This document shows, piece by piece, positions 9,249 through 60,339 of a stretch of 64,000 bases of DNA. This DNA comes from Mobula hypostoma (lineage: Eukaryota): NCBI RefSeq assembly GCF_963921235.1, contig NC_086109.1, positions 1,364,001 to 1,428,000 on the forward strand, given 5' to 3'. Both the position numbers and the translations under genes were made by a program. The notes under the pieces were generated by a model. It had not been told where the DNA came from, did not search any database, and saw nothing but the letters and a program-made list of their open reading frames with translations. How positions within the stretch are numbered: the first letter of the stretch is position 1; every line of letters starts with the position of its first letter.

Positions 9249-9315
9249 ATGCGGAAGTTCTCCTTGTGGATGGCTCCTTTCCTGTTTTGTGTTGTGGTCT
9301 GTGCCATCTATGTGG
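9249..9315 (+). CDS. CD2/SLAM-family gene 1, exon 1 (signal peptide MRKFSLWMAPFLFCVVVCAIYV)
   Basis: ATG with A at -3, basic N-terminus plus hydrophobic core, phase-1 donor G|GTAAG at 9316; paralogous to 37883-37949 (79% nt identity). Confidence 0.88.
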
Positions 9316-10589
9316 GTAAGTTCAGAGTTAGGAATTGACAAGGAAATGAGTGTCACACAACAATATCTTCTGAACGACTGTTGTCACTTTGAGACTCTGC
9401 TCTCCCATACTCTGACAGAGGAATCACTGTCCTCTCATTCCCTCACCCCTTTCTCCCCCAGTCCCACTCTTGCTCCCCCCACCCCAGTTCCTCCTACTTC
9501 CTTCCACCACCCTGCTTCTCCTTCCCACTTCTCCCTATCTCTCACCAGTAATTTCCTCCCCGTCATCCATTCTCCCTCTTCCTCCCACATATCCCAATAA
9601 ATGCATTCCCCCTCCTCCTCATGCACCCCCACTCCCTCCCTTCTTCAGCCTTCTGTTCCACCCTCACCCTCTGTCTGTCTCTCTCTTTTTTCCCACTGTC
9701 TTTGGTGAACTCTGGACTCATTCTCTCCTTCCCCATACTTTTTGAATTCAGAACCTTTCCACCCACCCCTCTCCATTTCTTCACTTTCTTTCTCCATCTC
9801 TGCCTCTGCTCCTCAATCCCTCTCTATCCCTCTCTCTATATCTTACTCTATACCCAGAGTCCAGCCCATCTCTCTCCTTGTTGGTATTTGACAGCATTTT
9901 ACTCACCTGTCTCCCTGCGAGAACCACCTCTCCCCATCCTGACACCAGCTCCCCATCATGATGGGTATTCAGATCATCACCTCTCTAAGGGATAATATTA
10001 ACAGACTCCAAATCTTGACATGCTCAGTACCAGGCCGAGACCTCACACACAGACACTCAACACAGTCTGTCTGGCACGGTTTCATAGTCAATGTGTATTA
10101 CAGTGAGTCGATTGACAAGGTCCCATGTCAGGCTGGTGAAGAAAACCCCTTGGGACCCAAGGGAGAGTGGGAGATTGGACCAAACTGAGTTTGGTGGGTG
10201 GGTGTTTGTATGACTGGAGTGGGGTCCACAGTGTCAGTGCCCCGCCCGTCACTCTGTTGTAGACAGCAATGGTTTCAAGCTGAATGTAGAGATATTTGTA
10301 CAGAGGTTGTCTGTGTGGATGCCAGTGAGAGGGTCAGTGTGGCCCAGGGAACTGTTAAACCGGTAATACTGGGTGATTTCATGTTCCTAATTTTCACTGG
10401 AATTCCCACAGTGTTAAGGAATTAAAGAAGGCAGAATTTTTCAGTGTCATCCCCATTTAACTAAACCTATCTGATTGCATCACTTCATTTCTTCTCATAT
10501 TTGTATGGATACCTAGAACAAATGAGCAAATATTGGCTACTGTCCAATGTTCAGCGAATCTCACTTCTGGCTAGAGAGGATATGTGGAC

Positions 10590-13500
10590 CTTTGTGAGGG
10601 TAGAAGCAAAAAGTAGTAAGGAGAAAAGTAAAAGTGGCAGGCCGACAAATCCAGGGCAAGCATCAAAAAGGGCCACTTTTCAACATAATTGTATAAGGGC
10701 TAAGAGAGTTGTAAAAGAGCGCCTGAAGGCTTTGGGTGTCAATGCAAGGAGCATTCGTAACAAGGTGGATGAATTGAAAGTGCAGATTGTTATTAATGAT
10801 TATGATATAGTTGGGATCACAGAGACATGGCTCCAGGGTGACCAGGGATGGGAGCTCAACGTTCAGGGATATTCAATATTCAGGAGGGATAGACATGAAA
10901 GAAAAGGAGGTGGGGTGGCGTTGCTGGTTAAAGAGGAGATTAACACAATAGAAAGGAAGGACATAAGCCGGGAAGATGTGGAATCGATATGGGTAGAGCT
11001 GCATAACACTAAGAGGCAGAAAACGCTGGTGGGAGTTGTGTACAGGCCACCTAACAGTAGTAGTGAGGTCGGGGATGGTACTAAACAGGAAATTAGAAAT
11101 GTGTGCAATAAAGGAACAGCAGTTATAATGGGTGACTTCAATCTACATGTAGAATGGGTGAACCAAATTGGTAAAGGTGCTGAGGAAGAGGATTTCTTGG
11201 AATGTATGCGGGATGGTTTTTTGAACCAACATGTCGAGGAACAAACTAGAGAGCAGGCTATTCTAGACTGGGTTTTGAGCAATGAGGAAGGGTTAATTAG
11301 CAATCTTGTCGTGAGAGGCCCCTTGGGTAAGAGTGACCATAATATGGTGGAATTCTTCATTAAGGTGGGGAGTGACATAGTTAATTCAGAAACAAAGGTT
11401 CTGAACTTAAAGAAGGGTAACTTTGAAGGTATGAGACGTGAATTAGCTAAGATGGACTGGCAAATGACACTTAAAGGATTGACAGAGGATATGCAATGGC
11501 AAGCACTTAAAGATTGCATGGATGAACTACAACAATTGTTCATCCCAGTTTGGCAAAAGAATAAATCAAGGAAGGTAGTGCACCCGTGGCTGACAAGAGA
11601 AATTAGGGATGGTATCAATTCCAAAGAAGAAGCATACAAATTAGCCAGAAAAAGTGGCTCACCTGAGGACTGGGAGAAATTCAGAGTTCAGTAGAGGAGG
11701 ACAAAGGGCTTAATTAGGAAGGGGAAAAAAGATATTGAGAGAAAACTGGCAGGGAACATAAAAACGGACTGTAAAAGCTTTTATAGATATGTAAAAAGGA
11801 AAAGACTGGTAAAGACAAATGTAGGTCCCCTACAGACAGAAACAGGTGAATTGATTATGGGGAGCAAGGACATGGCAGACCAATTGAATAATTACTTTGG
11901 TTCTGTCTTCACTAAGGAGGACATAAATAATCTTCCAGAAATAGTTGGGGACAGAGGGTCCAGCGAGAGGGAGGAACTGAGCGAAATACATGTTAGTAGG
12001 GAAGTGGTGTTAGGTAAATTGAAGGGATTAAAGGCAGATAAATCCCCAGGGTCAGATGGTCTGCATCCCAGAGTGCTTAAGGAAGTAGCCCAAGAAATAG
12101 TGGATGCATTAGTGATAATTTTTCAAAACTCTTTAGATTCTGGACTAGTTCCTGAGGATTGGAGGGTGGCTAATGTCACCCCACTTTTTAAAAAAGGAGG
12201 GAGAGAGAAACCGAGGAATTATAGACCGGTTAGCCTAATGTCGGTGGTGGGGAAACTGCTGGAGTCAGTTATCAAAGATGTGATAACAGCACATTTGGAA
12301 AGCAGTGAAATCATCAGACAAAGTCAGCATGGATTTGTCAAAGGAAAATCATGTCTGATGAATCTCATAGAATTTTTTGAGGATGTAACTAGTAGAGTGG
12401 ATAGGGGAGAACCAGTGGATGTGGTATATTTGGATTTTCAAAAGGCTTTTGACAAGGTCCCACACAGGAGATTAGTGTGCAAACTTAAAGCACATGGTAT
12501 TGGGGGTAAGGTATTGATGTGGATAGAGAATTGGTTAGCAGACAGGAAGCAAAGAGTGGGAATAAACGGGACCTTTTCAGAATGGCAGGCAGTGACCAGT
12601 GGGGTACCGCAAGGCTCAGTGCTGGGACCCCAGTTGTTTACAATATATATTAATGACTTGGATGAGGGAATTAAATGCAGCATCTCCAAGTTTGCGGATG
12701 ACATGAAGCTGGGCAGCAGTGTTAGCTGTGAGGAGGATGCTAAGAGGATGCAGGGTGACTTGGATAGGTTGGGTGAGTGGCCAAATTCATGGCAGATGCA
12801 ATTTAATGTGGATAAATGTGAAGTTATCCACTTTGGTGGTAAAAACAGGAAAGCAGATTATTATCTAAATGGTGGCCGATTAGGAAAAGGGGAGGTGCAA
12901 CGAGACCTGGGTGTCGTTATACACCAGTCATCGAAAGTGGGCATGCAGGTACAGCAGGCGGTGAAAAAGGCAAATGGTATGCTGGCATTCATAGCAAGAG
13001 GATTCGAGTACAGAAGCAGGGAGGTACTACTGCAGTTGTACAAGGCCTTGGTGAGACCACACCTGGAGTATTGTCTGAAGTTTTGGTCCCCTAATCTGAG
13101 GAAAGACATTCTTGCCATAGAGGGAGTACAAAGCAGGTTCATATGAAGAAAGACTGGATGAACTAGGCTTGTGCTCGTTAGAAGAATTTAGAAGATTGAG
13201 GGGAGATCTGATTGAAACGTATAAAATCCTAAAGGGATTGGACAGGCTAGATGCAGGAAGATTGTTCCCGATGTTGGGGAAGTCCAGAACAAGGGGTCAC
13301 AGTTTGAGGATACAGGGGAAGCCTTTTAGGACCGAGATGAGGAAAAACTTCTTCACACAGAGAGTGGTGAATCTGTGGAATTCTCTGCCACAGGAAACAG
13401 TTGAGGCCGGTTCATTGGCTATATTTAAGAGGGAGTTAGATATGGCCCTTGTGGCTAGGGGGATCAGAGGGTATGGAGGGAAGGCTAGTGCAGGGTTCTG

Positions 13501-13592
13501 AGTTGGATGATCAGCCATGATCATAATAAATGGCGGTGCAGGCTCGAAGGGCCAAATGGCCTACTCCTGCACCTATTTTCTATGTTTCTATG
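10590..13592 (+). mobile_element. Young CR1 LINE, near-complete ORF2 (APE endonuclease + RT), in gene 1 intron 1
   Basis: VNARSIRNKVDEL, GITETWL, GVVYRPP, MGDFN, LGKSDH; [26 protein letters not shown]; one premature TAG at 11692, a short deletion near 13145, and a (tttctatg) tail. Confidence 0.96.
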
Positions 13593-14214
13593 TAACATTA
13601 ATCTCCTCTCCTGCCTATATCAACAACCTGTGACAGAACCCACCAGGCCCTGCAGACGTGCATAACTCGGAGTTCCTCAGTACACCCAACTCTTCCACAT
13701 GGCTGAGTGTATTAGCATTCCCCACGTTGATCTCATTGACATTCACATAGAAACCATTCAACCAGGAACATCACTGACATCAGCTGACTCTTGGCATTAA
13801 TTCCTTCTTATGCTTGTGGGCTGATTCTGCCCTCTCCCTTACCACACCCTTGTTTGGAGAGTAAGTATAAAACTACACATATAAAATGTATAAAAGGAGT
13901 GTGTGTGAAGGAGGGAGGAAGAACTTAGAGGGAGTTATTTGTAGGAATAAGTTGGGATATGGATTAAAGTGAAGCAGAAATGTTCAAATTTCAAGAGGGA
14001 TTTTGATGAGGTGCATCACAAAAGGATATATCGATAATAAAATTGCAAGTAACATTTTGGAGTGGATCAATATGAGAATGGCTAACAGGACACAGAGAAA
14101 GGAGTGTAAAGGATTCATTTTCTGGTTGGTGAGATTTAACAAGTGTGTGCAGCATCTGTGAACCATAAAAGCTTAACAACCCTGAGAACAAGTGAAAGGT
14201 GTCAGATCCATACA

Positions 14215-15005
14215 CACTGTCACAGCGTGCACCCCCAGACAATGGATCACACAAAGAGTGCAACTCCCTCTGCAAGGTCCCATTACACATCCCCACAGCA
14301 TGGGTCAGACACAGAATGAAGCTCCCTCTACACCATTCCATCACACACTCACAGGACACGGGTCAGACACACAGCGAAGATCCCTCTAAATCGTCCATCA
14401 CACACTCCCAGGACATGGGTCAGACACAGAGTGAAGCTCCCTCTACACTGTCCCATCACACACTCCCAGTACACGGGTCAGACACAGAGCGAAGCTGCCT
14501 CTACACCGTCCCATCACACACTCCCTCTACACTGTCCCATCACACATTCCCAGGGCAAGGGTCAGACACAGAGTGAAACTCCCTCTACATCGTCCATCAC
14601 ACACTCCCAGGACACGGGTCAGACACAGAATGAAGCTCCCTCTACACTGTCCCATCACACACTCCCAGGTCACGGGTCAGACACAGAGTGAAACTCCCTC
14701 TACACAGTCCCATCACACACTCCCAGGACATGGGTCAGACACAGAGTGAAACTCCCTCTACACTGTCCCATCACACACTCCCAGGACACGGGTCAGACAC
14801 AGAGTGAAACTCCCTCTACACTGTCCCATCACACACTCCCAGGTCACGGGTCAGACACAGAGTGAAACTCCCTCTGCACTGTCCCATCACACACTCCCAG
14901 GACATGGGTCAGACACAGAGTGAAGCCCCCTCTACACTGTCCCATCACACACTTCCAGGACACGGGTCAGACACAGAGTGAAACTCCCTCTACACTGTCC
15001 CATCA
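14215..15005. repeat. 58-bp minisatellite, ~13 copies, in gene 1 intron 1
   Basis: Unit CTGTCCCATCACACACTCCCAGGACACGGGTCAGACACAGAGTGAAGCTCCCTCTACA, same as the array at 43768-52350. Confidence 0.95.
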
Positions 15006-15232
15006 GACTCCCGGGGCATAGTGTGGAGCAGCTTCACTGTGTGTTTAATTTATGTGTTGGGACAGCGTAGATGCACGTACCAAATTATCCTTCTGTAATG
15101 TAGAAATGGGGGCTGGGTCTCACACTGAGGTGGTAGGTGGACAATGGATTGCATGGCCTGTTGCTATTTCTGTGATTTTCCCATCTCTATTCCCTGAGCT
15201 CACTGGCTGACTGCCTCCTCTTGTCTCCACAG

Positions 15233-15553
15233 CTGAGACTACGGCTTCCCATTGTACGGTGAACGGAGTCACTGGTCAGTGGGTTATCTTACCGTCTGAG
15301 TTCCCAGTCACACAGGACATTACTGAGGTCCAGTGGAATCAGAAATCAAACAGTATCAGAATAGTGCGGTACCTGAATGGAAAGTCCAACTTTCCTGATT
15401 CCATTTATAAGCAACGGGTAACGTTTTATTCTGGGAACTTCTCTCTGAAGATCGAGAATCTACGGATCGAGGATGCTGGTGATTATGAGGTGACTTTTAG
15501 AAGAGGGAATTCAGGAACTGAATCTGCAAAAATAATCCGGCTGGAGGTGAACG
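15233..15553 (+). CDS. CD2/SLAM-family gene 1, exon 2 (IgV domain lacking the canonical B-F disulfide)
   Basis: Acceptor ctgactgcctcctcttgtctccacag, donor G|GTGAGT, 321 nt, phase 1-1. Translation has VNGVTGQWVILP, EVQW, FSLKIENLRIEDAGDYEV and IRLEV, i.e. V-set motifs without B/F cysteines, as in CD2-family N-terminal domains. Confidence 0.92.
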
Positions 15554-16899
15554 GTGAGTGGAGGGGCCGAGGTGTCACCAGATCCTGAAACAGCCCCAAT
15601 TAGTGGGTGAGGGGAGATCCTGTATGTTCTCCCATTTACAGCCCCCCATTGACTGCCAGTGGCCAGTGCTCGGCTCAGCCTCCCAGTGTAGAGGGGCTGA
15701 GACAGTGCCAGGTTGGGGGACATGCACACTACATTCACGGAGACTGGACCAGGTCCTGTGAGGGTTAAATGAGGAATCTCAGGGCTCCAAAACAGGGGAA
15801 GATAAGCGCATAGGAGGGGAGAATGGAGAGCCTGTTTGGGGTGTTGGAGTGGGCTGCATGGCTTAGTGACAGAGGAAGAAATTATGAAGGCTGCTCCCTC
15901 AAAGAACTCATGGGACTGAAGGGACCCCATACATCTCTTCCACCGGTTCTCTAGCGTTAATGGGATGCAGTTCAAATATGGAGCTTACTAAGGGGGAATT
16001 GAGCAGAAATCATATTGGAGTTTATTGGGAGAGAGAAACAGGGTTCCAGTGACTTTCAAACAGGCCGAGAACACAGCATCTTGAAATGAGCATTGTGCTA
16101 TAATGGATTCAGCAGGTGAGGCAGCAAATATAAATGGGTCAATGTTTCATTTTGGAGGCCCTGGAGGAGAACTGTCTTGTTATGGATTTCTTCTTGGGAT
16201 TGTTGGCAGATTAACTAACAAGAAAAAGGAAGAGCTGCATTCTGTTTGGAGAAATAAAAGCTGAAGTAATCGAGAGGATACAAGTCTACCAGTGAAAGAG
16301 CTTATGGGCCAGTGCAGAAAGGAGCGAGAGTGCAGTACTGTGCTGAGAAGAGATGGGCTGGATTGCTCCTCCATGGAGCTAGTCTAGATTATGGGCTGAA
16401 TGGCCTTCACTCTGCTGTGATTTCACTGCAGAATGGGCTCTGTCATCTGTGGTCCATAATGAGGACCTGTCTATGCTGGGTCACTCTCAGGTGTATAAGA
16501 GAAAGAATGATGATTCATGGGAGTGACAAAAGACATGGAAACTGAGAGAAGTTTGTGGAGCGATTAATCCCAGAGTCTGCGTCGAATCTGTATCCTCAGA
16601 GAGTGTTGAAGTAGGAATGAGACCGAGATGTTAGTCAGAAGGGCGAGGGCTCACCCAGAGCACTCCTGCCCCACTCTAGCAGCACCGTCTACAGGTGATG
16701 ACAGGCTCAGCTCCCCTTCAGAGTGGGCACGTGTGGCCTCCAGTTTAGGCTGTTCTGGCCTTTATATCTGAACCTCACTACGTGAGTATAGTTTACAATG
16801 TTTCAGAATAATAGTATTCAAAAGATTCTTACAACGATATCTGCATTAGGTCCCACTCATCCCAGGCTCCCAGTAAGACAGTTGTCAGCACATGCTGTC

Positions 16900-18070
16900 T
16901 CTCCGGGAACACACAAGAAATACAACAGCAGTAGGAGATGGCCTGTTCCACCATTCCGGTATAGATCATGGCTAATCTGTACAAGTCACAGCTCCCCTTC
17001 TCTGCCATCTCCCTATCTCCCTCTACCGCTTAATAGGTCAAGCATTTCTCCAGATCCACTTAGAACATAGAACAGTACAGCACAGTACAGGCCCTTCAGC
17101 CCACAATGTTGTGCTGACCCTCAAACCCTGCCTGCCATATAAGCCTCCAACTTAAATTCCTCCATATACCTGTCTAGTAGTCTCTTAAACTTCACTAGTG
17201 TATCTGCCTCCACCACTGACTCAGGCAGTGCATTCCACGCACCAACCACTCTCTGAGTAAAAAACCTTCCTCTAATATCCCTCTTGAACTTCCCACCCCT
17301 TACCTTAAAGCCATGTCCTCTTGTATTGAGCAGTGCTGCCCTGGGGAAGAGGCACTGGCTACCCACACTATCTATTCCTCTTAATACCTCTATCATGTAT
17401 CCTCTCATCCTCCTTCTCTCCAAAGAGTAAAGCACTAGCTCCCTTAATCTCTGATCATAATGCATACTCTCTAAACCAGGCAGCATCCTGGTAAATCTCC
17501 TCTGTACCCTTTCCAATGCTTCCACATCCTTCCTATAGTGAGGCAACCAGAACTGGACACAGTACTCCAAGTGCCTAACCAGAGTTTTATAGAGCTGCAT
17601 CATTACATTGTGACTCCTAAACCCTATCCCTCGACTTATGAAAGCTAACACCCCATAAGCTTTCTTAATTACCCTATCCACCTGCTCCCTTCCTGTTCCT
17701 GAATTCCACTCATATTGACTCAAAAGAGGATCCTGCTACATTACCCACCCTTTCTGTAGCTGTAATAGTATCCCTGACCAGTAATGCTACCCCTCCTCCC
17801 CTTTTTCCACCCTCTCTATCCCTTTTAAAGCACTGAAATCCAGGAATATTGAGAATCCATTCCTGCCCTGGTGCCATCCAAGTCTCTGTAATGGCCACTA
17901 CATCATAATTCCATGTATGTATCCAAGCTCTCAGTTCATCACCTTTGTTCCTGATGCTTCTTGCATTGAGGTACACACATTTCAGCCCTTCTACCTTACT
18001 GTCTTTGCACCGTTTATTCTGCTTCTCTTTCCTCAAAGCCTCTCTGTATGTTAGATCTGGCTTCCACCAC
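16900..18070 (-). mobile_element. CR1 fragments (3' RT end with tails, joined to an endonuclease fragment)
   Basis: ORF 17121-17723 LYKTLVRHLEYCVQFW...FFTQRVVGAWNALP; ORF 17710-18036 YLNARSIRNKGDEL...AITETW. Confidence 0.9.
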
Positions 18071-18181
18071 CCACTGTCTCCAGGAATACCAGATATACAC
18101 TACCTAATGCTAGAATAAATTCCAACATACTGCAATGTTAAATGACCAGCCCCTTAGCTTACAGTTATGTCCCATTGTTCT

Positions 18182-18605
18182 AGCCCTTACATACTATTCA
18201 TATTCTATACCTTCACAGTATGGTCCGGGTCAGTTTTGACCCGGCCCAAGAATCCCCTCATAACAAGTGTCTATACCAAATTTTTGAACCACAGATCTAT
18301 TTAGAATGTATAAGTAGCCTATCTGACATTAATAAATGGGTGATTAATCCTTAATTAATGTTTCAGAAATCTAAAATCCATTTCAATAGATATGGGTCAA
18401 ATTTGACCCGGAACAACCTCAATGTACAAAAATTTGTAGCACCTGTACAAAAGTATAAAATTTTAAAATATTTTCATATTTGCGCATTTTGGGTCACTTT
18501 AGGAATAGTCATCAAATTTCAGCTAAAAAAATGGCACTTAGGATGTCTTTATTGCTGTCAAATGTCAAAACGGGTCAAATTTGACCCAAACATTATGTAT
18601 GGGCT
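18182..18605. mobile_element. piggyBac-like MITE (~420 bp) with imperfect TIRs
   Basis: Left end AGCCCTTACATA versus right end reverse complement AGCCCATACATA; three internal palindromes GGGTCA-N4-TGACCC at ~18227, 18394 and 18572; TTAA target sites are not preserved. Confidence 0.5.
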
Positions 18606-19399
18606 GGAGTCTGTCACTGGTGTAAACAGCACATTAACTCTGTTACAGCCCATTGGAGACATATCAATGAATACACCATCCCTTCTCCTCCTGAACACCC
18701 TGGAATTCAGAAACAAACTACGTAACCACTTTTGGTAGGATGAACCTCTGCAGGAATTACCCAAGTGAATCTCCAGTGGTCCACTGTCACTCTGAGACAA
18801 GTGTGATCTCACCAACACAGAGTACAATTGCAATAAAATTCCTCATTTTTAAACTCCAGTCCATTCACATTCGCCAAAATACAGTTTTCTTTCCTAACTG
18901 TTTGGTGGACCTGTCTGCTGGCACTTTTTAAGGACTCCTGCACTTGAATCACTCAATTGGTCTGCAATTCACTCACTTGCAGTCTCGCTCCATTCAAAGA
19001 TAACCTGCCTTTTCATTCCTCTAACTGGTGCACAGCCTCTCCATTCCCCGTATTATACTCAACTTTGCACTTTGCTCATCTTCTCTGCTCACCTTTCTTT
19101 CTCAATGCCCAAACTCAAAGCCCATGTGAGGTACACACATCATGGTACAGGACATTTTTACTTTTACAAGGCACTCCACAGCAGACGTAATTTGAACATG
19201 GGCCACAATAGCAGTCCAAGTCCAAATGTGTGTAGAGCCCTGAAAAGATATTGATGATCCGTCCTTGCAAAAGCCTTCCCTGCACAACAGATGGAAAATG
19301 AACTGAGAAATTAGACCTCTGGGGTTATGACTCTCCAGTGCCATAAGGTGGTCATCAGCTGTTTAAAAGACTGTAAGACATATGAATACACAGGGTATG

Positions 19400-22310
19400 G
19401 AAGAAAATAGATCTTGTATCAGGTAGGAACAACCTACCAGGGGGAAGCAACAGCAGCCGTGCCTCTGGCACTGAGTCTGGCCCTGTGCCTCAGAAGGGTA
19501 GGGAGCTCAGCAGGATGGCAGCAGTCATGGGGGACTCTATTGTTAGGGGGACAGATAGGCAGTTGGTGGACTCAAAAAAGAATCACAGATGGTAGTTTGC
19601 CTCCCAGGTGCCAGGGTCCACGATGTTTCTGAATGCGTCCGGCATATCCTGAATAGCCGGAGGTAGTGGTACATATTGGTACCAACAACATAGGTAGAAA
19701 AAGGGAGGAAGTCCTGAGGGAGTTAGGAAGGAAGCTAGGAAGCAGGAACTCAAGAGTAGTAATCTCGGGATTGCTGCCTGTGCCACGCGACAGTGAGGAT
19801 AGGAATAGAATGAGACGACAGATAAATGCATGGTTGAAGAATTGGAGCAGTGGGCAGGGATTCAGATTTCTGGATCATTGGAACTTCTTCTGGAGCCGGT
19901 GTGACCTGTACAAAAGGAACGGGTTACACTTGAAACAGAGGGGGACAAATATTCTTGTGGGCAGGTTTACTAGGAGCTGTTGAGGCATGAGAGAGGAGCT
20001 TGCCCAGGCTGACTGGAGGAGGGTACTAGGGGGATGGCGGCAGAGAAGAGCTGGCTGAAGTTTCTGGGAATAGTTCACAAGGCGCAGGACAGATATGTCC
20101 CACAGTAGAAGCAGCTCTGAAATGGCAGGGGTAGGCTGACAAGGGAACTTAAGGACTGCATAAAAGCCGAGGAAAGGGCACTTAAGTTTGAAAAAGTGAG
20201 TGGGAAGTTCGGTGATCACTTTTAAAATCTAACAAAAGGCACCTAAAAAAGCAATAAGAGGGGAAAAGATGAAATCTGAGGACAAACAAGCCAATAATAT
20301 AAAGCAGGAACTAAAAACTTTTACGGTTATATAAAGAATAAAAGGGACTTGAGAGTTGATATTGGGTCAGTGAGTATCAGAGAGCAGGTGTGAGAGCCAT
20401 TGCTATTACAAAGGAAGAAGTGCAGGGCAAGCTCAAGGGTCTTAAAGTGGATAAGCCACCTGGAACAGTTGGACTACATCCCGGAGTCCTGAGAGATGTT
20501 GCTAAAGAGATAAGGGATAGAAACATAGAAACATCGAAAACATACAGCACAATACAGGCCCTTCGGCCCACAAAGCTGTGCTGAACATGTCCCTACCTTA
20601 GAACTACTTAGGCTTTACCCATAGCCCTCTATTTTTCTAAGCTCCATGTACCTATCCAGGGGCCTCTTAAAAGACCCTATCGTATCCACTCCACCACCGT
20701 CACCTGCAGCTCATTCCACACACTCACCACTCTCTGCATAAAAACTTACCCCTGACATCTCCTCTGTACCTACTTCCAGACACTAAAACTTTGCCCTCTC
20801 GTGTTAGCCATTTCAGCCCTGGGTAAGATCCTCTGACTATCCACACGATCAATACCTCTCATTATCTTGAACACCTCTATCAGGTCACCGCTCATCTTCC
20901 GTTGCTCCAAGGAGAAAAGGCCGAGTTCACTCAAACTATTCTCATAAGGCATGCTCCCCAATCCAGGCAACACCCTTGTAAATATCCTCTGCACCCTTTC
21001 TATGGTTTCCACATCTTTCCTGTAGTGAGACTAATGATAAAATATGTCAAAGTCGGCATGGTTTCTATAAGGGAAACCTTGCCTGACAAATCTATTAGAG
21101 TTCTCCAGGGAAATAACAGGCAGGGTGGACAAAGGAGAGGCAGTGGATGTCACTAACTTGGATTTTCAGAAGGTATTTGATAAGGTGCCACACATGAGGC
21201 TGCTTAACAAGATAAAATCCCATGGCCTTACAGGAAAGATACTGGCATGGGTAGAGGAATGGCTGACAGGCAGGAGGCTATAAAGGGGTCTTTTCTGGCT
21301 GGCTGCCTGTGACTAGTGGTGTTCCTCAGGGGTCAGTATTAGGACCGCTACTTTTCACATTGTTTGTCAATGATTTAGATAATGGAATTAATAGCTTTGT
21401 GGTAAAGTTTGTGGATGATACGAAGATAGGTGGAGGGGTAGGCAGTGTTGAGGAGGCAATGAGATTGCAGCAGGACTTAGACAAATTGGAAGAATGGGCA
21501 ATAAAGTGGAAGATGGAATACAGTGTTGGGAAATGTATGATAATGCATTTTGGTAACAGGAACAATAGTGCAGCTTTTATTTAAATGGGGAGAAAATTCA
21601 AACATCAGAGGTGAAAAGTGAATAAGGAGTCCTCGTGTAAGACTCCCAGAAGGTTAATTTACAGGTTGAGTCTGTGGTAAAGAAGGCAAATGCAATGTTG
21701 GCATTTATTTCAAGGGGAATAGAATATAAAAGCGAGGAGATAATGCTGAGCCTTTGTAAGACACTAGTCAAACCGCACTTGGAATATTGTCGACAGTTTT
21801 GTGCTTCATATCTCAGGAAGGATGTATTGTCATTGGAGAGAGTCCAGAGGAGGTTCACGAGGATAATTCCAGGAAGGACGGGGCTAATATATAAGGAGAG
21901 TTTGGCAGCTTTGGGTCTGTACTCTCTGGAATTTAGAAGAATATGTGAGGATCTAATTGAAACCTACCGAATGTTGAAAGCACTAGATACGGTGGATGTG
22001 AAGAGGATGTTTCCTAAGGTGAGGGTGTCCAGAACTAGAGTCCGCAGCCTTAAATTGAGGGGTGACCCTTATAACAGAGTTAAGGAGGAATTTTTTAGCC
22101 ATAGGGTAGTAAATCTGTGGAACGACTGCAGCCAAATCCATGGGTATATTTAATGCGGAAGTCGATAGTTTCCTGATTGGTCAGGGTATCAAAGGATATG
22201 GCAATGAGGCAGGAGTCTGGGGTTGAGTGTGATCCAGGATCAGCCACGATGGAATGGCGAAGCAGACTCGATGGGCTGAATGGCCTAATTTGGCTCCTAT
22301 GTCTTATGGT
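19400..22310 (+). mobile_element. Decayed CR1 LINE (ORF1 esterase + ORF2 RT) with a nested minus-strand CR1 3' end at ~20518-21030
   Basis: ORF1 SGNH-esterase motifs GDSIVRG, CLPGARV, VHIGTNNIG, GLHL; [21 protein letters not shown]; the insert begins with the inverted tail gatagaaacatagaaac. Confidence 0.88.
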
Positions 22311-22374
22311 CCTCTGGAGAACGGATTTAAGTTAATTCAGAGATACTGGAGATTATGGAGGTATTGGAAATTTT

Positions 22375-22790
22375 GAGCAACAGATACAAACTGCTGCAGG
22401 AATTCAGCAGGTCAGGCAGGGGAATAAACACTCGACATTTTAGGCAAAGACTCTTAATGAGGACTGGAAATGAAGGAGTCAGAGGTCCGATAAAAAGATC
22501 GGGAGAGGGAAAGGAGTACAAGCTGGCTGGTGATTGGTGAGACTAGGTGAGAGGGACAATAGGTTGGTAAGGAACATGGGGGTTAGGGGAATGATCTAAG
22601 GAGGTGTGGTGTGAGAGTTGTAAGACGGACAGGGGTGAAGAATAAATGGAACGGGTAAGAGCTGATGGGAAGGACCAGATGGAATATGACACGTTGCTTC
22701 TCCAACAAGGGTTTTACCTCATTGTGCCAGTGGACACCATGGAATATCTTGTCGGTGTGGGAACTGGAAGTCTGCGATGGGTTAATTAAT
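22375..22790 (-). mobile_element. Old Penelope-like element 3' remnant
   Basis: LLEKQRVIFHL resembles the GIY-YIG end LEEQHLIFHL; the terminal repeat resembles that at 31161-31257. Confidence 0.55.
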
Positions 22791-23143
22791 TCAGCATTGT
22801 GTTTGGTGCACATATTGTGATCTGAAGGGTTTGGTACTGTGCTGTACTGTTCCATGTGTGGTGTAGACAAAGATTTACACAGGTCTCACCTAAGTCCTGT
22901 CTCTCCTGTGCAGCAGAGTTGTACTGGATGGAGCAGAGTCTGTAAGGGGTGACCAGAGGGGTCTAAGTGGTATTGGAAGGAAAGCGATGTCGGAGAGTGA
23001 TAGAAGGTGTGATTTGAGGGGACTGACGCACTGAGTTGGTGTGATAGGGAGATTACTCCAGCCTGAGGTGGGATGGATACGTTAATTCCATTTCTCGGGG
23101 AGCGTGAGGACGGTATTAATCACGGAATCTTCTCTCGTTCCAG

Positions 23144-23343
23144 ATACAGTACCTGATAAAATAACAACACCATGCACAGCAGCACACAGTACAACGAAAA
23201 CAGATGGGAAAATAAATAATATGTCAGGAGACGGTTCAAAGGAAAAAATGCGGAATACAGCAATCCCATTGGTACCTCAGAAAATGAGTCTACTGTTCGG
23301 ACTGGCAGTGATGGTAACCCTCCTGATTTCCCTCTCGCTGTGA
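23144..23343 (+). CDS. Candidate terminal exon of gene 1: Ser/Thr-rich stalk + C-terminal GPI-anchor signal
   Basis: Acceptor tattaat...tcttctctcgttccag, phase 1 matching exon 2; 66 open codons DTVPDKITTPCTAAHSTTKT...MRNTAIPLVPQKMSLLFGLAVMVTLLISLSL then TGA, i.e. a hydrophobic tail ending directly at the stop. Confidence 0.72.
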
Positions 23344-23891
23344 TTAGCTTCATCCTGCAGAGGAAAGAAGAGCTGCAGGAAGGGAACCGTCTTCAGGCAC
23401 CGAAGATGACTAGATCTGACACACAGTCCGTGTGGGTGGTGGTTGGTGGAGGGCAGGAGACGGGTGGGGCAGGGTAGGAGTAGAAGGATGGTTATATCGG
23501 GGAATGGAGGGAGGGTTTAGATAGGGATCTGATTAGGGAACGATTTATAACTTTTGCATAAGGCTGCAAATAGTTGTTTCTCTTGCCTTTAATTTTGTTG
23601 CTCAGCTTTCTTTGCACTTGCTTTCTTTTTGTAAAATCTCCTGTTAGTTTGTAAACTTTTAGTAACCTAGTATATTTGGTGTTTACTTCAGTGGTATCTC
23701 TATAAAGCTGAAATGAGCTCAGTCAGCATGTGGCCACAGGTTGTTATGAGTATATTCCCTTATCGAAGCTGTGAGACCAATTTGCAGTACAAAGAGACAT
23801 CATCAGGACCTGTTCCTTTGTTATTTTGTTCTCCTTGCCTTGCTTGCTGCCATGGGCTGAACTTGTCTGACAAGTACGACAATGAACGTCT

Positions 23892-23897
23892 AATAAA
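23892..23897 (+). terminator. Candidate polyadenylation signal (AATAAA) for gene 1
   Basis: First AATAAA I found after the stop (~550 nt downstream), with a U-rich stretch following; not verified. Confidence 0.35.
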
Positions 23898-24941: not shown

Positions 24942-27272
24942 ATAACCATATAATCATATGTAAAGGGATTTCGACTTTTATGTTACTGCGGAGACTAATT
25001 AAAATGGCGTCTTTGTTATGTTAATCTGGGGAATGCAGCTTTGTTGTGTTAAATGCTGAGAAAGTTTGCGCTAGCAGCTTGTTTCTGTTTAGAGGGTGAT
25101 AAGAGGATGCTGTTAACCGATTGGGATAGTTGTTATGGTTTTTTGGTGTATTTGAAGATACTGTATGCGCGGGGTTTTGGGGCAGAAGACGGGAGAGCGA
25201 GACAGAGGATGGACGAGGCGCTGTGATGTCCGCTAACGGGGTCGGACCCCGAGGAGGGCATTCGGCGAGGAGACGGAGACGGACTCATGTGGAGCGTCTG
25301 GTCGACCACCGTTGTTGGTCCCAGGCGGCCGGTCGAGGTGGTCCGAGGGGTCGCAGGGTGAAGAAGAAGGTCCTTGAGCTTCAACTGTTTTGTGCACGAA
25401 AAGATTGAACTTCGATAAGTGTGGCGCCTTTTATTTTCCTTTTATATTTTATTCTCTCTTAATTATATAGTTCCAGTAATATCTATAAACTGTAAATCAG
25501 TTAATTGCATCTGGTGTATTGTCTGTTATTTGGGCGGTGTGGGGTACATCACACAGCATCCACACAAACAAATTATCCAGTTTGGCGGGGCCGAAGCTGT
25601 TTCCCTAGACGACAGCGAGCTGAGCGACCCTGAGGGTGGCCGGGGGGGGCTACACATATAACAATTACAGCACAGAAACAGGTCATCTCGGTACTTCTAG
25701 TCTGTATCGAACAATTACTCTCACCTAGTCCCACCAACTTGCACTCAGCCCATAACCCTCCATTCCTTTCCTGTCCATATATCTATCCAATTTGACTTTA
25801 AACGACAACATCGAACCTGCCTCAACCACTTCTGCCGGAAGCTCGTTCCACATAGCTACCACTCTCTGAGTAAAGAAGTTCCCCCTCATGTTACCCCTAA
25901 ACTTTTGCCCTTTAACTCTCAACTCATGTCCTCTTGTTTGAACCTCCCCCACTCTCAATGGAAAAGGTCTATCCACGTCAACTCTATCAATCCCCCTCAT
26001 AATTTTAAACACCTCTATTAAGTCCCCCCTCAGCCTTCTACGCTCCAAAGAATAAAGACCCAACTTGTTCAACCTTTTTCTGTAACTTAGGAGATGAAAC
26101 CCAGGTAACATTTTAGTAAACCTTCTCTGTACTCTCTCAATTTTATTGACATCTTTCCTATAATTCGGTGACCAGAACTGTACACAACACTCCAAATTTG
26201 GCCTTACCAATGCTTTGTACAATTTCAACATTACGTCCCAACTCCTATACTCAATGCTCTGATTTTTAAAGACCAGCATACCAAAAGCTTTCTTCACCAC
26301 TCTATCCACATGAGATTCCACCTTCAGGGAACTAAGCACCATTATTCCTAGATCCCTCTGTTCTACTGCATTCTTCAATGCCCTACCATTTACCATGTAT
26401 GTCCTATTTTGATTAGTCCTACCAAAATGTAGCACCTCACATTTATCAGCATTAAACTCCATCTGCAATCTTTCAGCTGACTCTTCTAACTGGCCTAAAT
26501 CTCTCTGCAAGCTTAGAAAACCTACTTCATTATCCACAACTCCATCCATCTTAGTATCATCTGCATACTTACTAATTCAATTTATCACCCCATCATCCAG
26601 ATCATTAATATATATGACAAACAACATTGGACCCAGTACAGATCCCTGAGGCACACCACTAGACACCGGCCTCCAATCTGACAAACAGTTATCCACCACT
26701 ACTCTCTGGCGTCTCCCATCCAGCCACTGCTGAATCCATTTTACTACTTCCATATTAATGCCTAATGATTGAACCTTCCTAACTAACCTTCCATGTGGAA
26801 CCTTGTCAATATACTTACTGAAGTCCATATAGACAACATCCACCGCTTTACCCTCGTCAACTTTCCTAGTAACCTCATCAAAAAATTCAGTAAGATTTGT
26901 CTAACGTGACCTTCCACGCACAAATCCATGTTGACTGTTCCTAATCAGACCCTGTCTATCCAGCTGATTATAAATACCGTCTCTAAGAATACTTTCCATC
27001 AATTTACCCACCACTGACATCAAACTCACAGGCCGATAATTGCTAAGTTTACTCTTAGAACCCTTTTTAAACAATGGAACAACATGAGCAATACGCCAAT
27101 CCTCCAGCACCATCCCCGTTTGTAATGATATTTGAAATACTTCTGTCAGAGCCCCTGCTATTTCCACACTAACTTCCCTCAAGGTCCTAGGGAATATCCT
27201 GTCAGGACCCAGAGACTTATCCACTTTTATATTCCTTAAAAGTGCCAGTACTTCCTCTTCTTTAATCATCAA
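24942..27272 (-). mobile_element. 5'-truncated CR1 LINE inserted in the Penelope element; its tail is interrupted by a solo LTR
   Basis: ORFs 26901-27272, 26577-26843 and 25725-26549 give a continuous CR1 RT; the tail sequence ataaccatataa/catataacaattacagc flanks the LTR. Confidence 0.92.
24959..25654. mobile_element. Solo LTR (696 bp), Gypsy/ERV type
   Basis: TGTA...TACA termini and a 4-bp target-site duplication CATA (24955-24958 and 25655-25658). Confidence 0.85.
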
Positions 27273-32973: not shown

Positions 32974-33447
32974 NNNNNNNNNNNNNNNNNNNNNNNNNNN
33001 NNNNNNNNNNNNNNNNNNNNNNNNNNNNNNNNNNNNNNNNNNNNNNNNNNNNNNNNNNNNNNNNNNNNNNNNNNNNNNNNNNNNNNNNNNNNNNNNNNNN
33101 NNNNNNNNNNNNNNNNNNNNNNNNNNNNNNNNNNNNNNNNNNNNNNNNNNNNNNNNNNNNNNNNNNNNNNNNNNNNNNNNNNNNNNNNNNNNNNNNNNNN
33201 NNNNNNNNNNNNNNNNNNNNNNNNNNNNNNNNNNNNNNNNNNNNNNNNNNNNNNNNNNNNNNNNNNNNNNNNNNNNNNNNNNNNNNNNNNNNNNNNNNNN
33301 NNNNNNNNNNNNNNNNNNNNNNNNNNNNNNNNNNNNNNNNNNNNNNNNNNNNNNNNNNNNNNNNNNNNNNNNNNNNNNNNNNNNNNNNNNNNNNNNNNNN
33401 NNNNNNNNNNNNNNNNNNNNNNNNNNNNNNNNNNNNNNNNNNNNNNN
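32974..33447. other. Assembly gap (474 N)
   Basis: Run of N. Confidence 1.
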
Positions 33448-34547: not shown

Positions 34548-35850
34548 ACAAAGTCAGCATGGATTTGTGAAAGGAAAATCATGTCTGACGAATCTCATAG
34601 AATTTTTTGAGGATGTAACTAGTAGAGTGGATAGGGGAGAACCAGTGGATGTGGTATATTTGGATTTTCAAAAGGCTTTTGACAAGGTCCCACACAGGAG
34701 ATTAGTGTGCAAACTTAAAGCACACGGTATTGGGGGTAAGGTATTGGTGTGGGTGGAGAATTGGTTAGCAGACAGGAAGCAAAGAGTGGGAATAAACGGG
34801 ACCTTTTCAGAATGACAGGCGTTGACTAGTGGGGTACCGCAAGGCTCAGTGCTGGGACCCCAGTTGTTTACAATATATATTAATGACTTGGATGAGGGAA
34901 TTAAATGCAGCATCTCCAAGTTTACGGATGACATGAAGCTGGGTGGCAGTGTTAGCTGTGAGGAGGATGCTAAGAGGATGCAGGGTGACTTGGATAGGTT
35001 GGGTGAGTGGCCAAATTCATGGCAGATGCAATTTAATGTGGATAAATGTGAAGTTATCCACTTTGGTGGCAAAAATAGGAAAACAGATTATTATCTGAAT
35101 GGTGGCCGATTAGGAAAAGGGGAGGTGCAACGAGACCTGGGTGTCATTATACACCAGTCATTGAAAGTGGGCATGCAGGTACAGCAGGCGGTGAAAAAGG
35201 TGAATGGTATTCTGGCATTCATAGCAAGAGGATTCGAGTACAGGAGCAGGGAGGTACTACTGCAGTTGTACAAGGCCTTGGTGAGACCACACCTGGAGTA
35301 TTGTGTGCAGTTCTGGTCCCCTAATCTGAGGAAAGACATTTTTGCCATAGAGGGAGTACAAAGAAGGTTCACCAGATTGATTCCTGGGATGGCAGGACTT
35401 TCATATGATGAAATACTGGATCAACTAAGCTTATACTCTGGAATTTAGAAGATTGAGGGGGGATCTTATTGAAACGTATAAAATCGTAAAGGGATTGGAC
35501 AGGCTAGATGCAGGAAGATTGCTCCCGATGTTGGGGAAGTCCAGAACGAGGGGTCACAGTTCGAGGATAAAGTGGAAGCCTTTTACGACCGAGATTAGGA
35601 AAAACTTCTTCACACAGAGAGTGGTGAATCTGTGGAATTCTCTGCCACAGGAAACAGTTGAGGCCAGTTCATTGGCTATATTTAAGAGGGAGTTAGATAT
35701 GGCCCTTGTGGCTAAAGGGATCAGGGGGTATGGAGGGAAGGCTGGTACAGGGTTCTGAGTTGGATGATCAGCCATGATCATACTGAATGGTGGTGCAGGC
35801 TCGAGGGGCCGAATGGCCTACTCCTGGACCTATTTTCGATGTTTCTGTGT
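34548..35850 (+). mobile_element. 5'-truncated young CR1, nearly identical to 12317-13590
   Basis: Long identical runs with the intron-1 copy (e.g. aatctcatagaattttttgaggatgtaactagtagagtggataggggagaaccagtggat); RT ORFs 34567-34815, 34822-35448 and 35453-35758. Confidence 0.95.
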
Positions 35851-37882: not shown

Positions 37883-37949
37883 ATGTGGAAGTTCTCCATT
37901 AGGATGGTCCCCTCCCTACTTAGTGTTGTCATCTGCGCCATCTATGTGG
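37883..37949 (+). CDS. CD2/SLAM-family gene 2, exon 1 (signal peptide MWKFSIRMVPSLLSVVICAIYV)
   Basis: ATG in AAGATG context, hydrophobic core, phase-1 donor G|GTAAG at 37950; same length as gene 1 exon 1. Confidence 0.88.
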
Positions 37950-52350: not shown

Positions 52351-52705
52351 ACCCCCATGACATGGTTCAGAGCAGCTTCATTATGTGTGTAATCTGCATG
52401 GTGGGACTATGTAGATGCAGCTACCTTGTCTTCCCTCACCATGTTCACCCTCCCCGTCTCAGACTTGTCCACCGAAATCTGGTTGCAGACTTCAACTTCC
52501 GTCTTCGGAGACGGCTACAGATAGTAAACAGTCTGTTCACCCTTGGCCTCGCTGTGTGATTTAGGAACTGAGAGCTGGATCTCTCAAATGGGTAGAGTTC
52601 AGACAATGGGCCGCATGGCGTGCTGTGTGTCTGTGACTCTCTGAGCTCCGATACTTCCTCTGGTCACTGAGCTCACCTGCTGACTGTCTCGTCTTGTCTC
52701 CTCAG

Positions 52706-53026
52706 CTGGGACTGGGGCTTCCGGTACCACTGTGTACACAATCCCTGGGAAACGTGTCACCTTGCTGTCTGGGATCACAGCCGGACCGCACATTGCTGAG
52801 GTTGAGTGGAAACGGTCATCGCCCAGAACCACGTTAGTGCGATACTCGAAAACCAACACTAAATATTTTGAATCCATTTACACGGGACGGATTAAGCTTA
52901 ATCTCAGTAACTTCAATCTGGAAATCCTGGATCTATGGAAAAATGATACTGGTGATTTTGAGGTTATTTTTACAAAAGATAATTCAGGACTTGAAAACAG
53001 AAAGCTAATCCGACTGGAGGTGTACG
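52706..53026 (+). CDS. CD2/SLAM-family gene 2, exon 2 (cysteine-less IgV domain)
   Basis: Acceptor ctgactgtctcgtcttgtctcctcag, donor G|GTAAGT, 321 nt, phase 1-1; GKRVTLLS, EVEW, FNLEILDLWKNDTGDFEV, IRLEVY; gap-free alignment to gene 1 IgV. Confidence 0.93.
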
Positions 53027-54490: not shown

Positions 54491-54769
54491 AGAGATGCAT
54501 TCAGTTTGGCGGAATAAGAGATGACATAATTGTGAGGGTAGGTCTGTGTGGAGAATAAGGGACAGGGCAATGGGATGGATTTCTCCTTCGTAGACCCAGT
54601 CCAGCCGATGGGCTGAATGGCCTTCCTGCTGTGACCACACTATAATATTCCGCACAGTTCTGGGATCATCTGATACTGTGAGAGTGTGACATTTCAGTCG
54701 ACTGCGTGGGGTCTCGGTGGAAGGTGTGGTCTGGTCTGATAATTGATCTTCAAAGAAAGATGGTTGGAA

Positions 54770-55369: not shown

Positions 55370-55660
55370 AGCTGGTGTCAGGAGCAAACATCGTGGTTCA
55401 GAACTGCACTGGGACTTGTAACCTTAAGCTGACCTGCTCCGTGACTTCGGGCGACGCCATCAGCTTCACGTGGCAGAGGGAAGGAGAAATTGTGGGGAAT
55501 GACAGCACCCATCAGCTCGGGGGACTCGGAGAGACGCTACTGGTTCGTCAGACAGCAGAGGCTAAGGACGTTCCGTACAACTGTGAGGTCGGAAACCCTC
55601 TCAACACAGTGGTGGCAGGTATCAAACTGGAGCGGCACGCCTGTAAACTGCGCTCATCCG
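55370..55660 (+). CDS. CD2/SLAM-family gene 2, exon 3 (IgC2 domain)
   Basis: Acceptor catcttctccgtctcag, donor G|GTGAGT, 291 nt, phase 1-1; NCTGTCNLKLTCSV...FTW...YNCEVGNP...HAC matches the SLAM/CD2 C2 pattern (TC...LTC...W...YxC...NP...C). Confidence 0.92.
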
Positions 55661-60265: not shown

Positions 60266-60339
60266 ATTACTTCCACCATGCACCGGGAGAGAGAATTCCC
60301 GAGATTCACCATCTTCTACCAGAAGATATTTCAACACCT

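What the first reader, a model, noticed from the sequence alone, without database searches (positions are those of the whole stretch)
9249..23343. Gene 1 predicts a single-IgV, GPI-anchored CD2-family protein with no C2 domain
Joining exons 9249-9315, 15233-15553 and 23144-23343 gives an uninterrupted 195-aa ORF: signal peptide, IgV, Thr/Ser-rich stalk, then N-T-A (candidate omega site) and a 17-residue hydrophobic tail ending at the stop. I found no C2 exon in the gap-free 15.5-23.1 kb interval, whereas the paralog has one. Mammalian GPI-linked members (CD48, GPI-CD58) are V+C2, so a V-only GPI form with a stalk replacing C2 would be an unusual architecture, possibly a ligand or decoy.
Basis: partly seen in the sequence, partly recalled or inferred. 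Interest (0 to 1): 0.8.

Follow-up and report, generated by a model that had tools for sequence, protein, structure and literature searches.

The report
Tail-less single-domain SLAM/CD2-like ray gene
The predicted three-exon gene is really in the devil-ray sequence: an immune-receptor relative with one binding domain whose membrane anchor was cut short by an old frameshift, so it probably hangs on a lipid (GPI) anchor, but no transcript or public gene model was found for it.

Summary
Exons 9249-9315, 15233-15553 and 23144-23343 have canonical splice sites and compatible phases, and they join to a 195-aa ORF. The window is Mobula hypostoma. The V domain is CD2/SLAM-type by Pfam, PDB sequence search and predicted fold.

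No C2 exon exists in gene 1: a 30-domain C2 profile hits only gene 2 (55370-55660).

The main new result is that the hydrophobic tail is the front half of an ancestral transmembrane helix. Just past the stop, other reading frames still encode the rest of the helix and a decayed cytoplasmic tail whose signalling tyrosine is lost.

Gene 2 is annotated (XP_062922442.1, V+C2) and ends at the same stop. RNA-like contigs that translate exactly to its C-terminus start at the exon-3 acceptor.

The conversion copies the documented origin of GPI-anchored CEACAMs, so GPI anchoring is plausible (N167-T-A, 7-residue spacer, 19-residue tail). I could not test it.

C2-less relatives with transmembrane and tyrosine-motif tails are already annotated in rays, including a C2-skipping isoform, so V-only is not unusual there.

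Gene 1 has no protein model that I could find and no gene-1-specific RNA. I rate it a modestly interesting new variant. Another first-reader note flags a single-IgV gene 1.25 Mb away.

The parts
9249..9315 (+). Gene 1 exon 1: start codon and signal peptide (22 codons + 1 nt), donor GTAAGT
   Evidence: It is homologous to gene-2 exon 1 (14/66 nt differ; dN 0.20, dS 0.46). The flanks are about 70-76% identical to the gene-2 flanks.
15233..15553 (+). Gene 1 exon 2: CD2/SLAM-type IgV domain, 321 nt, phase 1-1, no B/F-strand cysteines
   Evidence: Pfam V-set and 2B4. PDB sequence search is led by SLAMF6, SLAMF5 and CD48/CD2. The exon keeps all 9 invariant and 12 near-invariant family columns. The AF2 model has pLDDT 86.8 and its best fold match is 2B4, TM 0.86-0.88.
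15554..23143 (+). Gene 1 intron 2: gap-free, filled with LINE/reverse-transcriptase fragments, no C2 exon or remnant
   Evidence: The only collinear piece with gene 2 is 16353-16420, which matches 54570-54634.
23144..23343 (+). Gene 1 exon 3: 47-residue stalk (one Cys; N-glycosylation sites at the V/stalk junction and in the stalk), candidate omega site N167-T-A, 19-residue hydrophobic tail, TGA stop
   Evidence: It differs at 6 nt (5 residues) from the last exon of the annotated paralog P0073.
23272..23340 (+). Front half of an ancestral transmembrane helix, homologous to the TM of ray relatives and closed by a stop after a shift of frame
   Evidence: Local alignments to P0038, P0035, P0043 and P0032.
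23366..23446 (+). Decayed remnant of the juxtamembrane and first tyrosine-motif region, in the +1 frame relative to the ORF, with two stops and the tyrosine replaced; now 3' flank
   Evidence: It is 55.6% identical over 27 residues to the P0035 tail and 12/14 to P0038. The same remnant is present in the gene-2-type copy.
23892..23897 (+). First AATAAA after the stop (possible poly(A) signal)
   Evidence: Sequence only; it is not supported by RNA.
37883..37949 (+). Gene 2 (XP_062922442.1) exon 1, signal peptide
52706..53026 (+). Gene 2 IgV exon (321 nt, the same length as in gene 1)
   Evidence: 100% to P0073 residues 23-129. It is 40% aa and 66.7% nt identical to the gene-1 V exon.
55370..55660 (+). 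Gene 2 C2 exon (291 nt, phase 1-1). The last exon of gene 2 lies beyond the window.
   Evidence: The gene spans 37.2 kb.

Best explanation
Gene 1 is a lineage-specific paralog, lacking the C2 domain, of the annotated Mobula hypostoma SLAM/CD2-family gene that lies next to it (gene 2).

Shown here:
- Gene 1 has an intact signal-peptide exon and an intact CD2/SLAM-type V exon.
- It has no C2 exon.
- Its last exon encodes a stalk and then only the front half of what used to be a transmembrane helix.
- A shift of frame inside the TM-coding stretch runs into a stop three codons later.
- The former cytoplasmic tail with its tyrosine switch motif lies decayed in the 3' flank.
- Gene 2 carries the same truncation and is transcribed, so the truncation predates the two copies of this exon or was spread between them.

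Inferred:
- If the 195-aa product is made, it enters the ER and its signal peptide is removed near Ala23.
- The last 28 residues then act as a GPI attachment signal, with cleavage at about Asn167.
- The result would be a single glycosylated V domain on a roughly 40-residue stalk in the outer leaflet, with no signalling tail.
- It would then act as a ligand or decoy for tyrosine-motif SLAM-like receptors of the same ray family, as CD48 does for 2B4.
For: - The ORF and splice sites are as described.
- The V domain belongs to the family by Pfam, PDB sequence search, alignment and fold.
- C2 is absent.
- The TM front half lies in the ORF frame, and the tail remnant lies in the +1 frame with two stops and a lost Tyr.
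- P0073 (XP_062922442.1) ends at the identical residues.
- An RNA-like contig in run X9 (depth 32.8) starts at the exon-3 acceptor, has no gaps over 23143-23432, and translates exactly to the P0073 C-terminus.
- The GPI-signal layout is N-T-A, a 7-residue spacer and a 19-residue tail with mean Kyte-Doolittle score 2.34 and no charge. N-T-A is conserved in gene 2.
- The ORF has survived about 30% flank divergence from gene 2. The simulated chance of having no stop is 0.05 at d=0.15.
Against: - No protein model for gene 1 was found. Searches covered 69-218 aa with the V exon and 160-511 aa with the tail.
- No RNA-like run holds the gene-1 V exon.
- Every RNA-like letter at the six discriminating coding positions is the gene-2 variant.
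- V-exon dN/dS of about 1.25 fits relaxed constraint as well as diversifying selection.
- No GPI predictor or wet test was available.
- A recent silencing (d about 0.03) would leave the ORF intact half the time.
Confidence: 0.5

Rival explanations
1. Gene 1 is a silent or dying duplicate, an unprocessed pseudogene in the making. It lost its C2 exon by deletion or LINE insertion and is no longer transcribed, and its ORF is still open only because the silencing is recent.
For: No protein model was found. No RNA-like run holds its V exon. The only RNA seen on exon 3 carries gene-2 letters. V-exon dN/dS is about 1.25, and all 6 exon-3 differences from gene 2 are non-synonymous. Intron 2 is full of LINE fragments where a C2 exon would be expected.
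Against: All three exons, all four splice sites and the start codon are intact. The V domain keeps every invariant and near-invariant family column. Under neutrality at half the flank divergence, only about 5% of simulated copies keep an open frame, before counting indels. RNA sampling is tiny: a few runs of 86-241 million letters from unknown tissues, kept as contigs that drop rare variants.
Confidence: 0.3
2. The protein is made but is not GPI-anchored. In this case the 19-residue tail would act as a bare transmembrane anchor without a cytoplasmic tail, or the protein would be secreted or retained and degraded.
For: The tail is by descent a TM helix. The omega site is only a rule-based guess. 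No predictor or experiment was run.
Against: A 19-residue uncharged hydrophobic C-terminus with nothing behind it, preceded at the usual distance by small residues (N-T-A), has the classical GPI-signal layout (established knowledge). The same kind of truncation produced GPI-anchored CEACAMs (PMC2832619). N-T-A and the tail are kept in both paralogs while the residues around them changed.
Confidence: 0.12
3. The three-exon model is wrong. In this case the V exon would splice to exons not recognised here, either a divergent membrane-proximal domain or a read-through into gene 2 that gives a multi-V protein like some ray relatives.
For: Ray relatives include V-V, V-V-V and V-C2-V models. All domain exons are phase 1-1, so they can be combined freely.
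Against: Profiles of the family V and C2 domains find only two V exons and one C2 exon in the 64 kb. tblastn with family tails finds nothing between 23.4 and 37.9 kb except the remnant that abuts exon 3. Gene 2 has its own leader exon and is annotated as starting there. The exon-3 acceptor is strong and is used in the paralog.
Confidence: 0.06
4. The stop and frameshift are assembly errors, and the real gene encodes a full TM plus cytoplasmic tail.
For: The inferred ancestral frame changes sit at short homopolymer runs (read from the sequence).
Against: The same frame and stop occur in the independent paralogous copy. They also occur in an RNA-like contig without gaps and in the annotated protein. 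DNA contigs show no indel there. The downstream remnant carries two further stops and a lost tyrosine.
Confidence: 0.02

Closest known systems
CD48 (SLAMF2) and the GPI isoform of CD58, mammalian CD2/SLAM family
   Same: It shares the disulfide-less CD2/SLAM-type V domain; CD48, CD2 and 2B4 are among the best PDB sequence and fold matches. It has no cytoplasmic signalling tail, and its C-terminus is laid out like a GPI signal.
   Different: CD48 and CD58 are V+C2 (own knowledge; CD48 as a GPI-anchored molecule with a two-Ig-domain extracellular region: PMC7472110). Gene 1 has V only, on a 47-residue stalk. Identity to the mammalian V domains is only about 25-30%, so it is not an orthologue. 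Its tail is visibly a recently truncated TM exon.
XP_062922442.1 (P0073), 'T-lymphocyte surface antigen Ly-9-like', Mobula hypostoma: gene 2 of this window
   Same: The leader is homologous and the exon phases are the same. The stalk and tail exon is near-identical (6 nt differ) and has the same stop and the same decayed remnant.
   Different: Gene 2 has a C2 exon (55370-55660). Its V domain is only 40% identical to that of gene 1. It is annotated and RNA-supported, and gene 1 is neither.
Annotated V-only SLAM-like proteins of rays: XP_062922449.1 (M. hypostoma), XP_072133953.1 and XP_072133959.1 (M. birostris), XP_072909027.1 (Hemitrygon akajei, the C2-skip isoform of XP_072909026.1)
   Same: They have a single family V domain (38-50% identical) joined directly or by a Thr-rich stalk to the membrane anchor, with no C2.
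   Different: They keep a full TM helix and a 48-117-residue cytoplasmic tail with T-x-Y-x-x-V/I motifs. Gene 1 ends inside the helix.
GPI-anchored CEACAM5-8 of primates and a swine CEACAM
   Same: The route is the same: a small deletion in the TM exon of an ITIM/ITSM-type IgSF receptor, directly followed by a stop, turns the helix into a GPI signal. This has happened repeatedly and independently (PMC2832619).
   Different: It is a different IgSF family. Those proteins carry IgC-like domains under the N domain, and their GPI anchoring is experimentally established.
Thy-1 (CD90) and CD160: single-Ig-domain GPI-anchored proteins
   Same: They show that one Ig domain on a GPI anchor is a workable architecture (own knowledge, not tested here).
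   Different: They are unrelated Ig subfamilies and did not appear among the sequence or fold matches listed.

Membership tests
CD2/SLAM family (IgSF) | N-terminal V-set domain that lacks the canonical B-F disulfide | tested here: met
   There is no Cys at the B or F strand positions (the F strand reads Y-E-V-T-F), as in all 20 aligned family members. The V-set match has E=1.2e-9.
CD2/SLAM family (IgSF) | Specific sequence and fold similarity of the V domain to SLAM/CD2 members rather than to other V-set families | tested here: met
   Pfam Receptor_2B4 scores 24.8 bits against a cut-off of 21. The PDB sequence search is led by SLAMF6 (1.6e-6), SLAMF5 and CD48/CD2. Foldseek is led by 2B4 (TM 0.86-0.88), then CD2, CD84, CD48 and NTB-A. 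NCBI names relatives SLAMF5/8/9-like, Ly-9-like or CD48-like.
CD2/SLAM family (IgSF) | Membrane-proximal C2 domain with conserved cysteines (V+C2 ectodomain unit) | tested here: not met
   Gene 1 has no C2 exon or remnant. Gene 2 has one. The feature is also absent from several annotated ray relatives and from one C2-skip isoform.
SLAM receptors proper (SLAMF1, 3-7) | Cytoplasmic tail with T-x-Y-x-x-V/I switch motifs | tested here: not met
   The ORF stops inside the TM. The former motif lies out of frame beyond the stop, with the Tyr replaced and two stops.
GPI-anchored CD2-family members (CD48 type) | C-terminal GPI signal: small omega and omega+2 residues, a 5-10-residue spacer, a 15-20-residue hydrophobic end, and no cytoplasmic residues | tested here: inconclusive
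   The layout fits by rule: N167-T-A, a 7-residue spacer and a 19-residue tail. No trained predictor was available.
GPI-anchored CD2-family members (CD48 type) | Actual lipid anchoring (PI-PLC release, dependence on GPI transamidase) | not testable with these tools
   This needs expression experiments.
Expressed protein-coding gene | Spliced transcript that joins the three exons | tested here: inconclusive
   No run holds the V exon. RNA-like contigs on exon 3 carry gene-2 letters. Sampling is very thin.

The most novel reading that the evidence does not exclude
In the devil-ray lineage, tyrosine-motif SLAM-like receptors were converted into GPI-anchored ligands or decoys by a frameshift in the TM exon, in convergence with primate CEACAM5-8. 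Gene 1 would then be the first CD2/SLAM-family protein that is both C2-less and GPI-anchored: an expressed, selected single-V decoy whose V domain is diversifying against its neighbour's.
Probability: 0.3. Interest if true: 0.5.

Novelty: new variant of a known kind. Interest (0 to 1): 0.35.

Why it matters
If gene 1 is expressed and lipid-anchored, it would show three things. First, the V+C2 unit thought to define CD2/SLAM ectodomains is dispensable. Second, cartilaginous fish reinvented a CD48-like tail-less ligand on their own. Third, the "frameshift in the TM exon" route to a GPI anchor, so far documented for CEACAMs, recurs in another immune receptor family. It would also give a simple pair, V-only and V+C2 on the same anchor, for asking what the C2 domain contributes to receptor spacing at cell contacts. 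If gene 1 is silent, the finding reduces to one more decaying duplicate in a fast-turnover immune gene cluster.

Tried and rejected
- **DNA of gene 2's last exon and of a M. birostris V-only relative.** The look-up of encoding contigs returned gene spans but no DNA because the files were too large. The indels could therefore not be mapped on a DNA alignment. The frame history rests on protein-to-frame alignments.
- **An annotated gene-1 protein.** The 125-aa open stretch around the V exon found nothing in the 69-218 aa range. The P0073 tail region found only P0073 in the 160-511 aa range. A model longer than 218 aa with a different 3' end would have been missed.
- **Orthologues.** The nearest relative of gene 2 is 54% identical, and the best for the gene-1 V domain is 50%. 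The truncation could not be dated by comparing species.
- **RNA.** It cannot show the exon 2 to exon 3 junction, which is 7.6 kb apart against a 6-kb limit.
- **The X9 contig end.** The contig stops one unmatched letter beyond the acceptor. That could mean several upstream contexts, but I do not count it as evidence.
- **Assembly error.** I considered it and rejected it (see rivals).
- **A weak C2-like tblastn match at 15939-16037.** With E=1.0, I rejected it as chance; the C2 profile listed no piece on that strand overlapping the site up to E=100.
- **Word search of earlier findings.** It returned nothing.
Full report
**1. Observation**

The three intervals are bounded by canonical sites: AG before 15233 and 23144, GTAAGT after 9315, GTGAGT after 15553. 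Their lengths are 67, 321 and 200 nt, in phases 1/1. They join to 588 nt, a 195-aa ORF that ends in TGA at 23341-23343. The only N run in the window is 32974-33447.

**2. What the gene is**

The V exon matches Pfam V-set (1.2e-9) and passes the Receptor_2B4 cut-off. A search of 1.84 billion representative proteins gave 294 hits. The best are 45-50% identical and come from rays and a sawfish, under the names SLAMF5/8/9-like, Ly-9-like or CD48-like.

One hit, P0073 (XP_062922442.1, Mobula hypostoma, 292 aa), is 100% identical to the second V exon of the window. It is also 97% identical over the C2 exon in an alignment that runs into the upstream intron. The window is therefore M. hypostoma, and "gene 2" is an annotated gene spanning 37.2 kb, whose last exon lies beyond the window.

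The gene-1 V domain keeps all 9 invariant and 12 near-invariant columns of a 20-member family alignment. It lacks the B/F cysteines, as the whole family does. Its closest solved relatives by sequence are SLAMF6, SLAMF5 and a CD48/CD2 chimera. An AlphaFold model (pLDDT 86.8) superposes best on 2B4/CD244 (TM 0.86-0.88), followed by CD2, CD84, CD48 and NTB-A.

**3. No C2**

The gene-2 C2 exon is 55370-55660 (291 nt, phase 1-1). Three searches found no C2 in gene 1:
- tblastn with the gene-2 C2 domain gave a best E of 1.0 inside 15554-23143.
- tblastn with 150 family proteins found nothing.
- A profile built from 30 family C2 domains, run on all six frames, gave one significant hit in the whole window, gene 2 itself at E=1.7e-37.

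A V-domain profile finds only the two V exons. Intron 2 is largely LINE and reverse-transcriptase debris. One 68-bp collinear piece (16353-16420, matching 54570-54634) places the expected C2 position where LINE fragments now sit. The C2 exon is genuinely gone.

**4. Origin of the hydrophobic tail (the main new result)**

The ORF frame aligns to the first half of the TM helix of ray relatives, up to about 23331. Three codons later it stops.

Immediately downstream, the +1 frame (23366-23446) reads a stretch that is 12/14 identical to the juxtamembrane region of P0038. It is 55.6% identical over 27 residues to P0035, running through that protein's first T-x-Y-x-x-I motif. The stretch has two stops, and the tyrosine is replaced.

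The third frame is open across the gap and reads a hydrophobic stretch followed by basic residues, like the second half of the helix. This suggests two successive one-base frame changes. That detail is inference from reading the frames.

So the "GPI tail" is a truncated TM exon, and the old signalling tail is rotting in the 3' flank.

**5. The paralog shares the truncation and is expressed**

P0073 ends at the same residues as gene 1.

Two small RNA-like runs of the same species (X8 and X9) cover exon 3 from exactly 23143/23144. They have no depth in the intron just upstream (22868-23135; only isolated repeat-type matches farther up at 22667-22867), and the coverage is gapless to 23432. At all six discriminating coding positions (23243, 23246, 23248, 23249, 23265, 23296) they carry the other letters. 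Applying those letters to the window sequence gives exactly the P0073 C-terminus. It also gives the same stop and the same downstream remnant.

This has three consequences:
- It validates the exon-3 acceptor.
- It rules out an assembly error.
- It shows that the truncated form is the transcribed, annotated state of gene 2.

It gives no support for transcription of gene 1. No run holds the gene-1 V exon. No protein model containing its V exon (69-218 aa) or its tail (160-511 aa) was found.

**6. Integrity and selection**

| Comparison, gene 1 vs gene 2 | Result |
|---|---|
| V exons | 40% aa, 66.7% nt identity; dN 0.46, dS 0.37 |
| Introns flanking the V exons | about 70% identical |
| Exon 1 | dN/dS about 0.43 |
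| Exon 3 coding | 6 nt differ, all non-synonymous |
| Intron just upstream of exon 3 | about 10% different |

The 3' end was therefore duplicated or homogenised later than the rest of the gene.

A simple neutral simulation leaves the ORF free of stops in 5% of trials at d=0.15, but in 52% at d=0.03. The open frame and the conserved core of the V domain argue for long-term maintenance. They cannot exclude recent silencing.

**7. Is the architecture unusual?**

Among close relatives of up to 520 aa, several annotated models are V + stalk or linker + TM + tyrosine-motif tail, without C2:
- M. hypostoma XP_062922449.1, on the same chromosome
- M. birostris XP_072133953.1 and XP_072133959.1
- Hemitrygon akajei XP_072889590.1 and XP_072886340.1

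H. akajei XP_072909027.1 is an exact C2-exon-skip isoform of XP_072909026.1. C2-less members are thus normal in this batoid expansion.

What is special is the tail-less end. Among ray relatives it was seen only in P0073 and in gene 1.

**8. Mechanism**

By the classical rules, a GPI signal has small omega and omega+2 residues, a short polar spacer, an uncharged hydrophobic end of 15-20 residues, and nothing cytoplasmic. This is established knowledge.

The last 28 residues fit that layout: N167-T-A, a 7-residue spacer, and 19 hydrophobic residues with mean Kyte-Doolittle score 2.34. N-T-A is conserved in gene 2, while the residues on both sides of it changed.

The route has a documented precedent. 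GPI-anchored CEACAMs arose repeatedly from ITIM/ITSM-type ancestors through small deletions in the TM exon followed directly by a stop (PMC2832619).

I therefore take GPI anchoring as the most likely fate of the gene-2 product, and of the gene-1 product if it is made. Lacking any tail, either protein can only act as a ligand or decoy, as CD48 does for 2B4 (PMC7472110). All of this paragraph is inference; no predictor or experiment was available.

**9. Verdict**

The gene is a new variant within a known family. It is not a new kind of system, and its expression is unproven.

Other first-reader notes on this genome concern the same family:
- s1-142158: a single-IgV gene 1.25 Mb beyond the end of the window
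- s1-143249: V-domain diversification in these two paralogs
- s1-141813: CD2/SLAM-like V domains on a five-pass membrane anchor

I tested only s1-143249, and only partly (dN/dS of about 1.25, which is ambiguous).

Noticed in passing
window 14230-15005 and 43845-52371: The same 58-bp minisatellite sits in intron 1 of both genes and ends about 230-330 bp upstream of each V exon. Gene 1 has about 13 copies and gene 2 about 148 copies (8.5 kb, 90% matches).
   Followed up: partly
window 23237-23420 (run X8, contig 18): One low-depth RNA-like contig has the gene-2 letters at the six coding positions but the gene-1 letters at 23352 and 23362. It could be an allele, a third copy of this exon, or a chimeric contig.
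   Followed up: no
window 55116-55160: A 15-residue stretch about 210 bp upstream of the gene-2 C2 exon resembles part of that exon (10/15 identical). It is possibly a remnant of a partial C2 duplication.
   Followed up: no
window 15253-15255 (Cys30) and 23170-23172 (Cys140): Mature gene 1 has exactly two cysteines, one at the start of the V domain and one in the stalk. Gene 2 lacks the first but has a fifth cysteine at the end of C2 that could pair with the stalk cysteine. The gene-1 V-domain cysteine may compensate for the lost C2 partner, or it may allow dimerisation.
   Followed up: no
window 17121-18036, 19666-22153, 25725-27272, 34567-35758, 57367-63535: Many LINE/reverse-transcriptase fragments of the type common in shark and ray genomes fill the introns and the intergenic space. 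One protein hit (P0137) is itself a fusion of such an element with an Ig domain.
   Followed up: no
window 22845-23167 versus the second DNA copy in run X4: Similarity between the two copies of the last exon extends about 300 bp into the upstream intron at roughly 90%. The V-exon flanks are only about 70% alike. The 3' ends of the two genes were duplicated or converted more recently than the 5' parts.
   Followed up: partly
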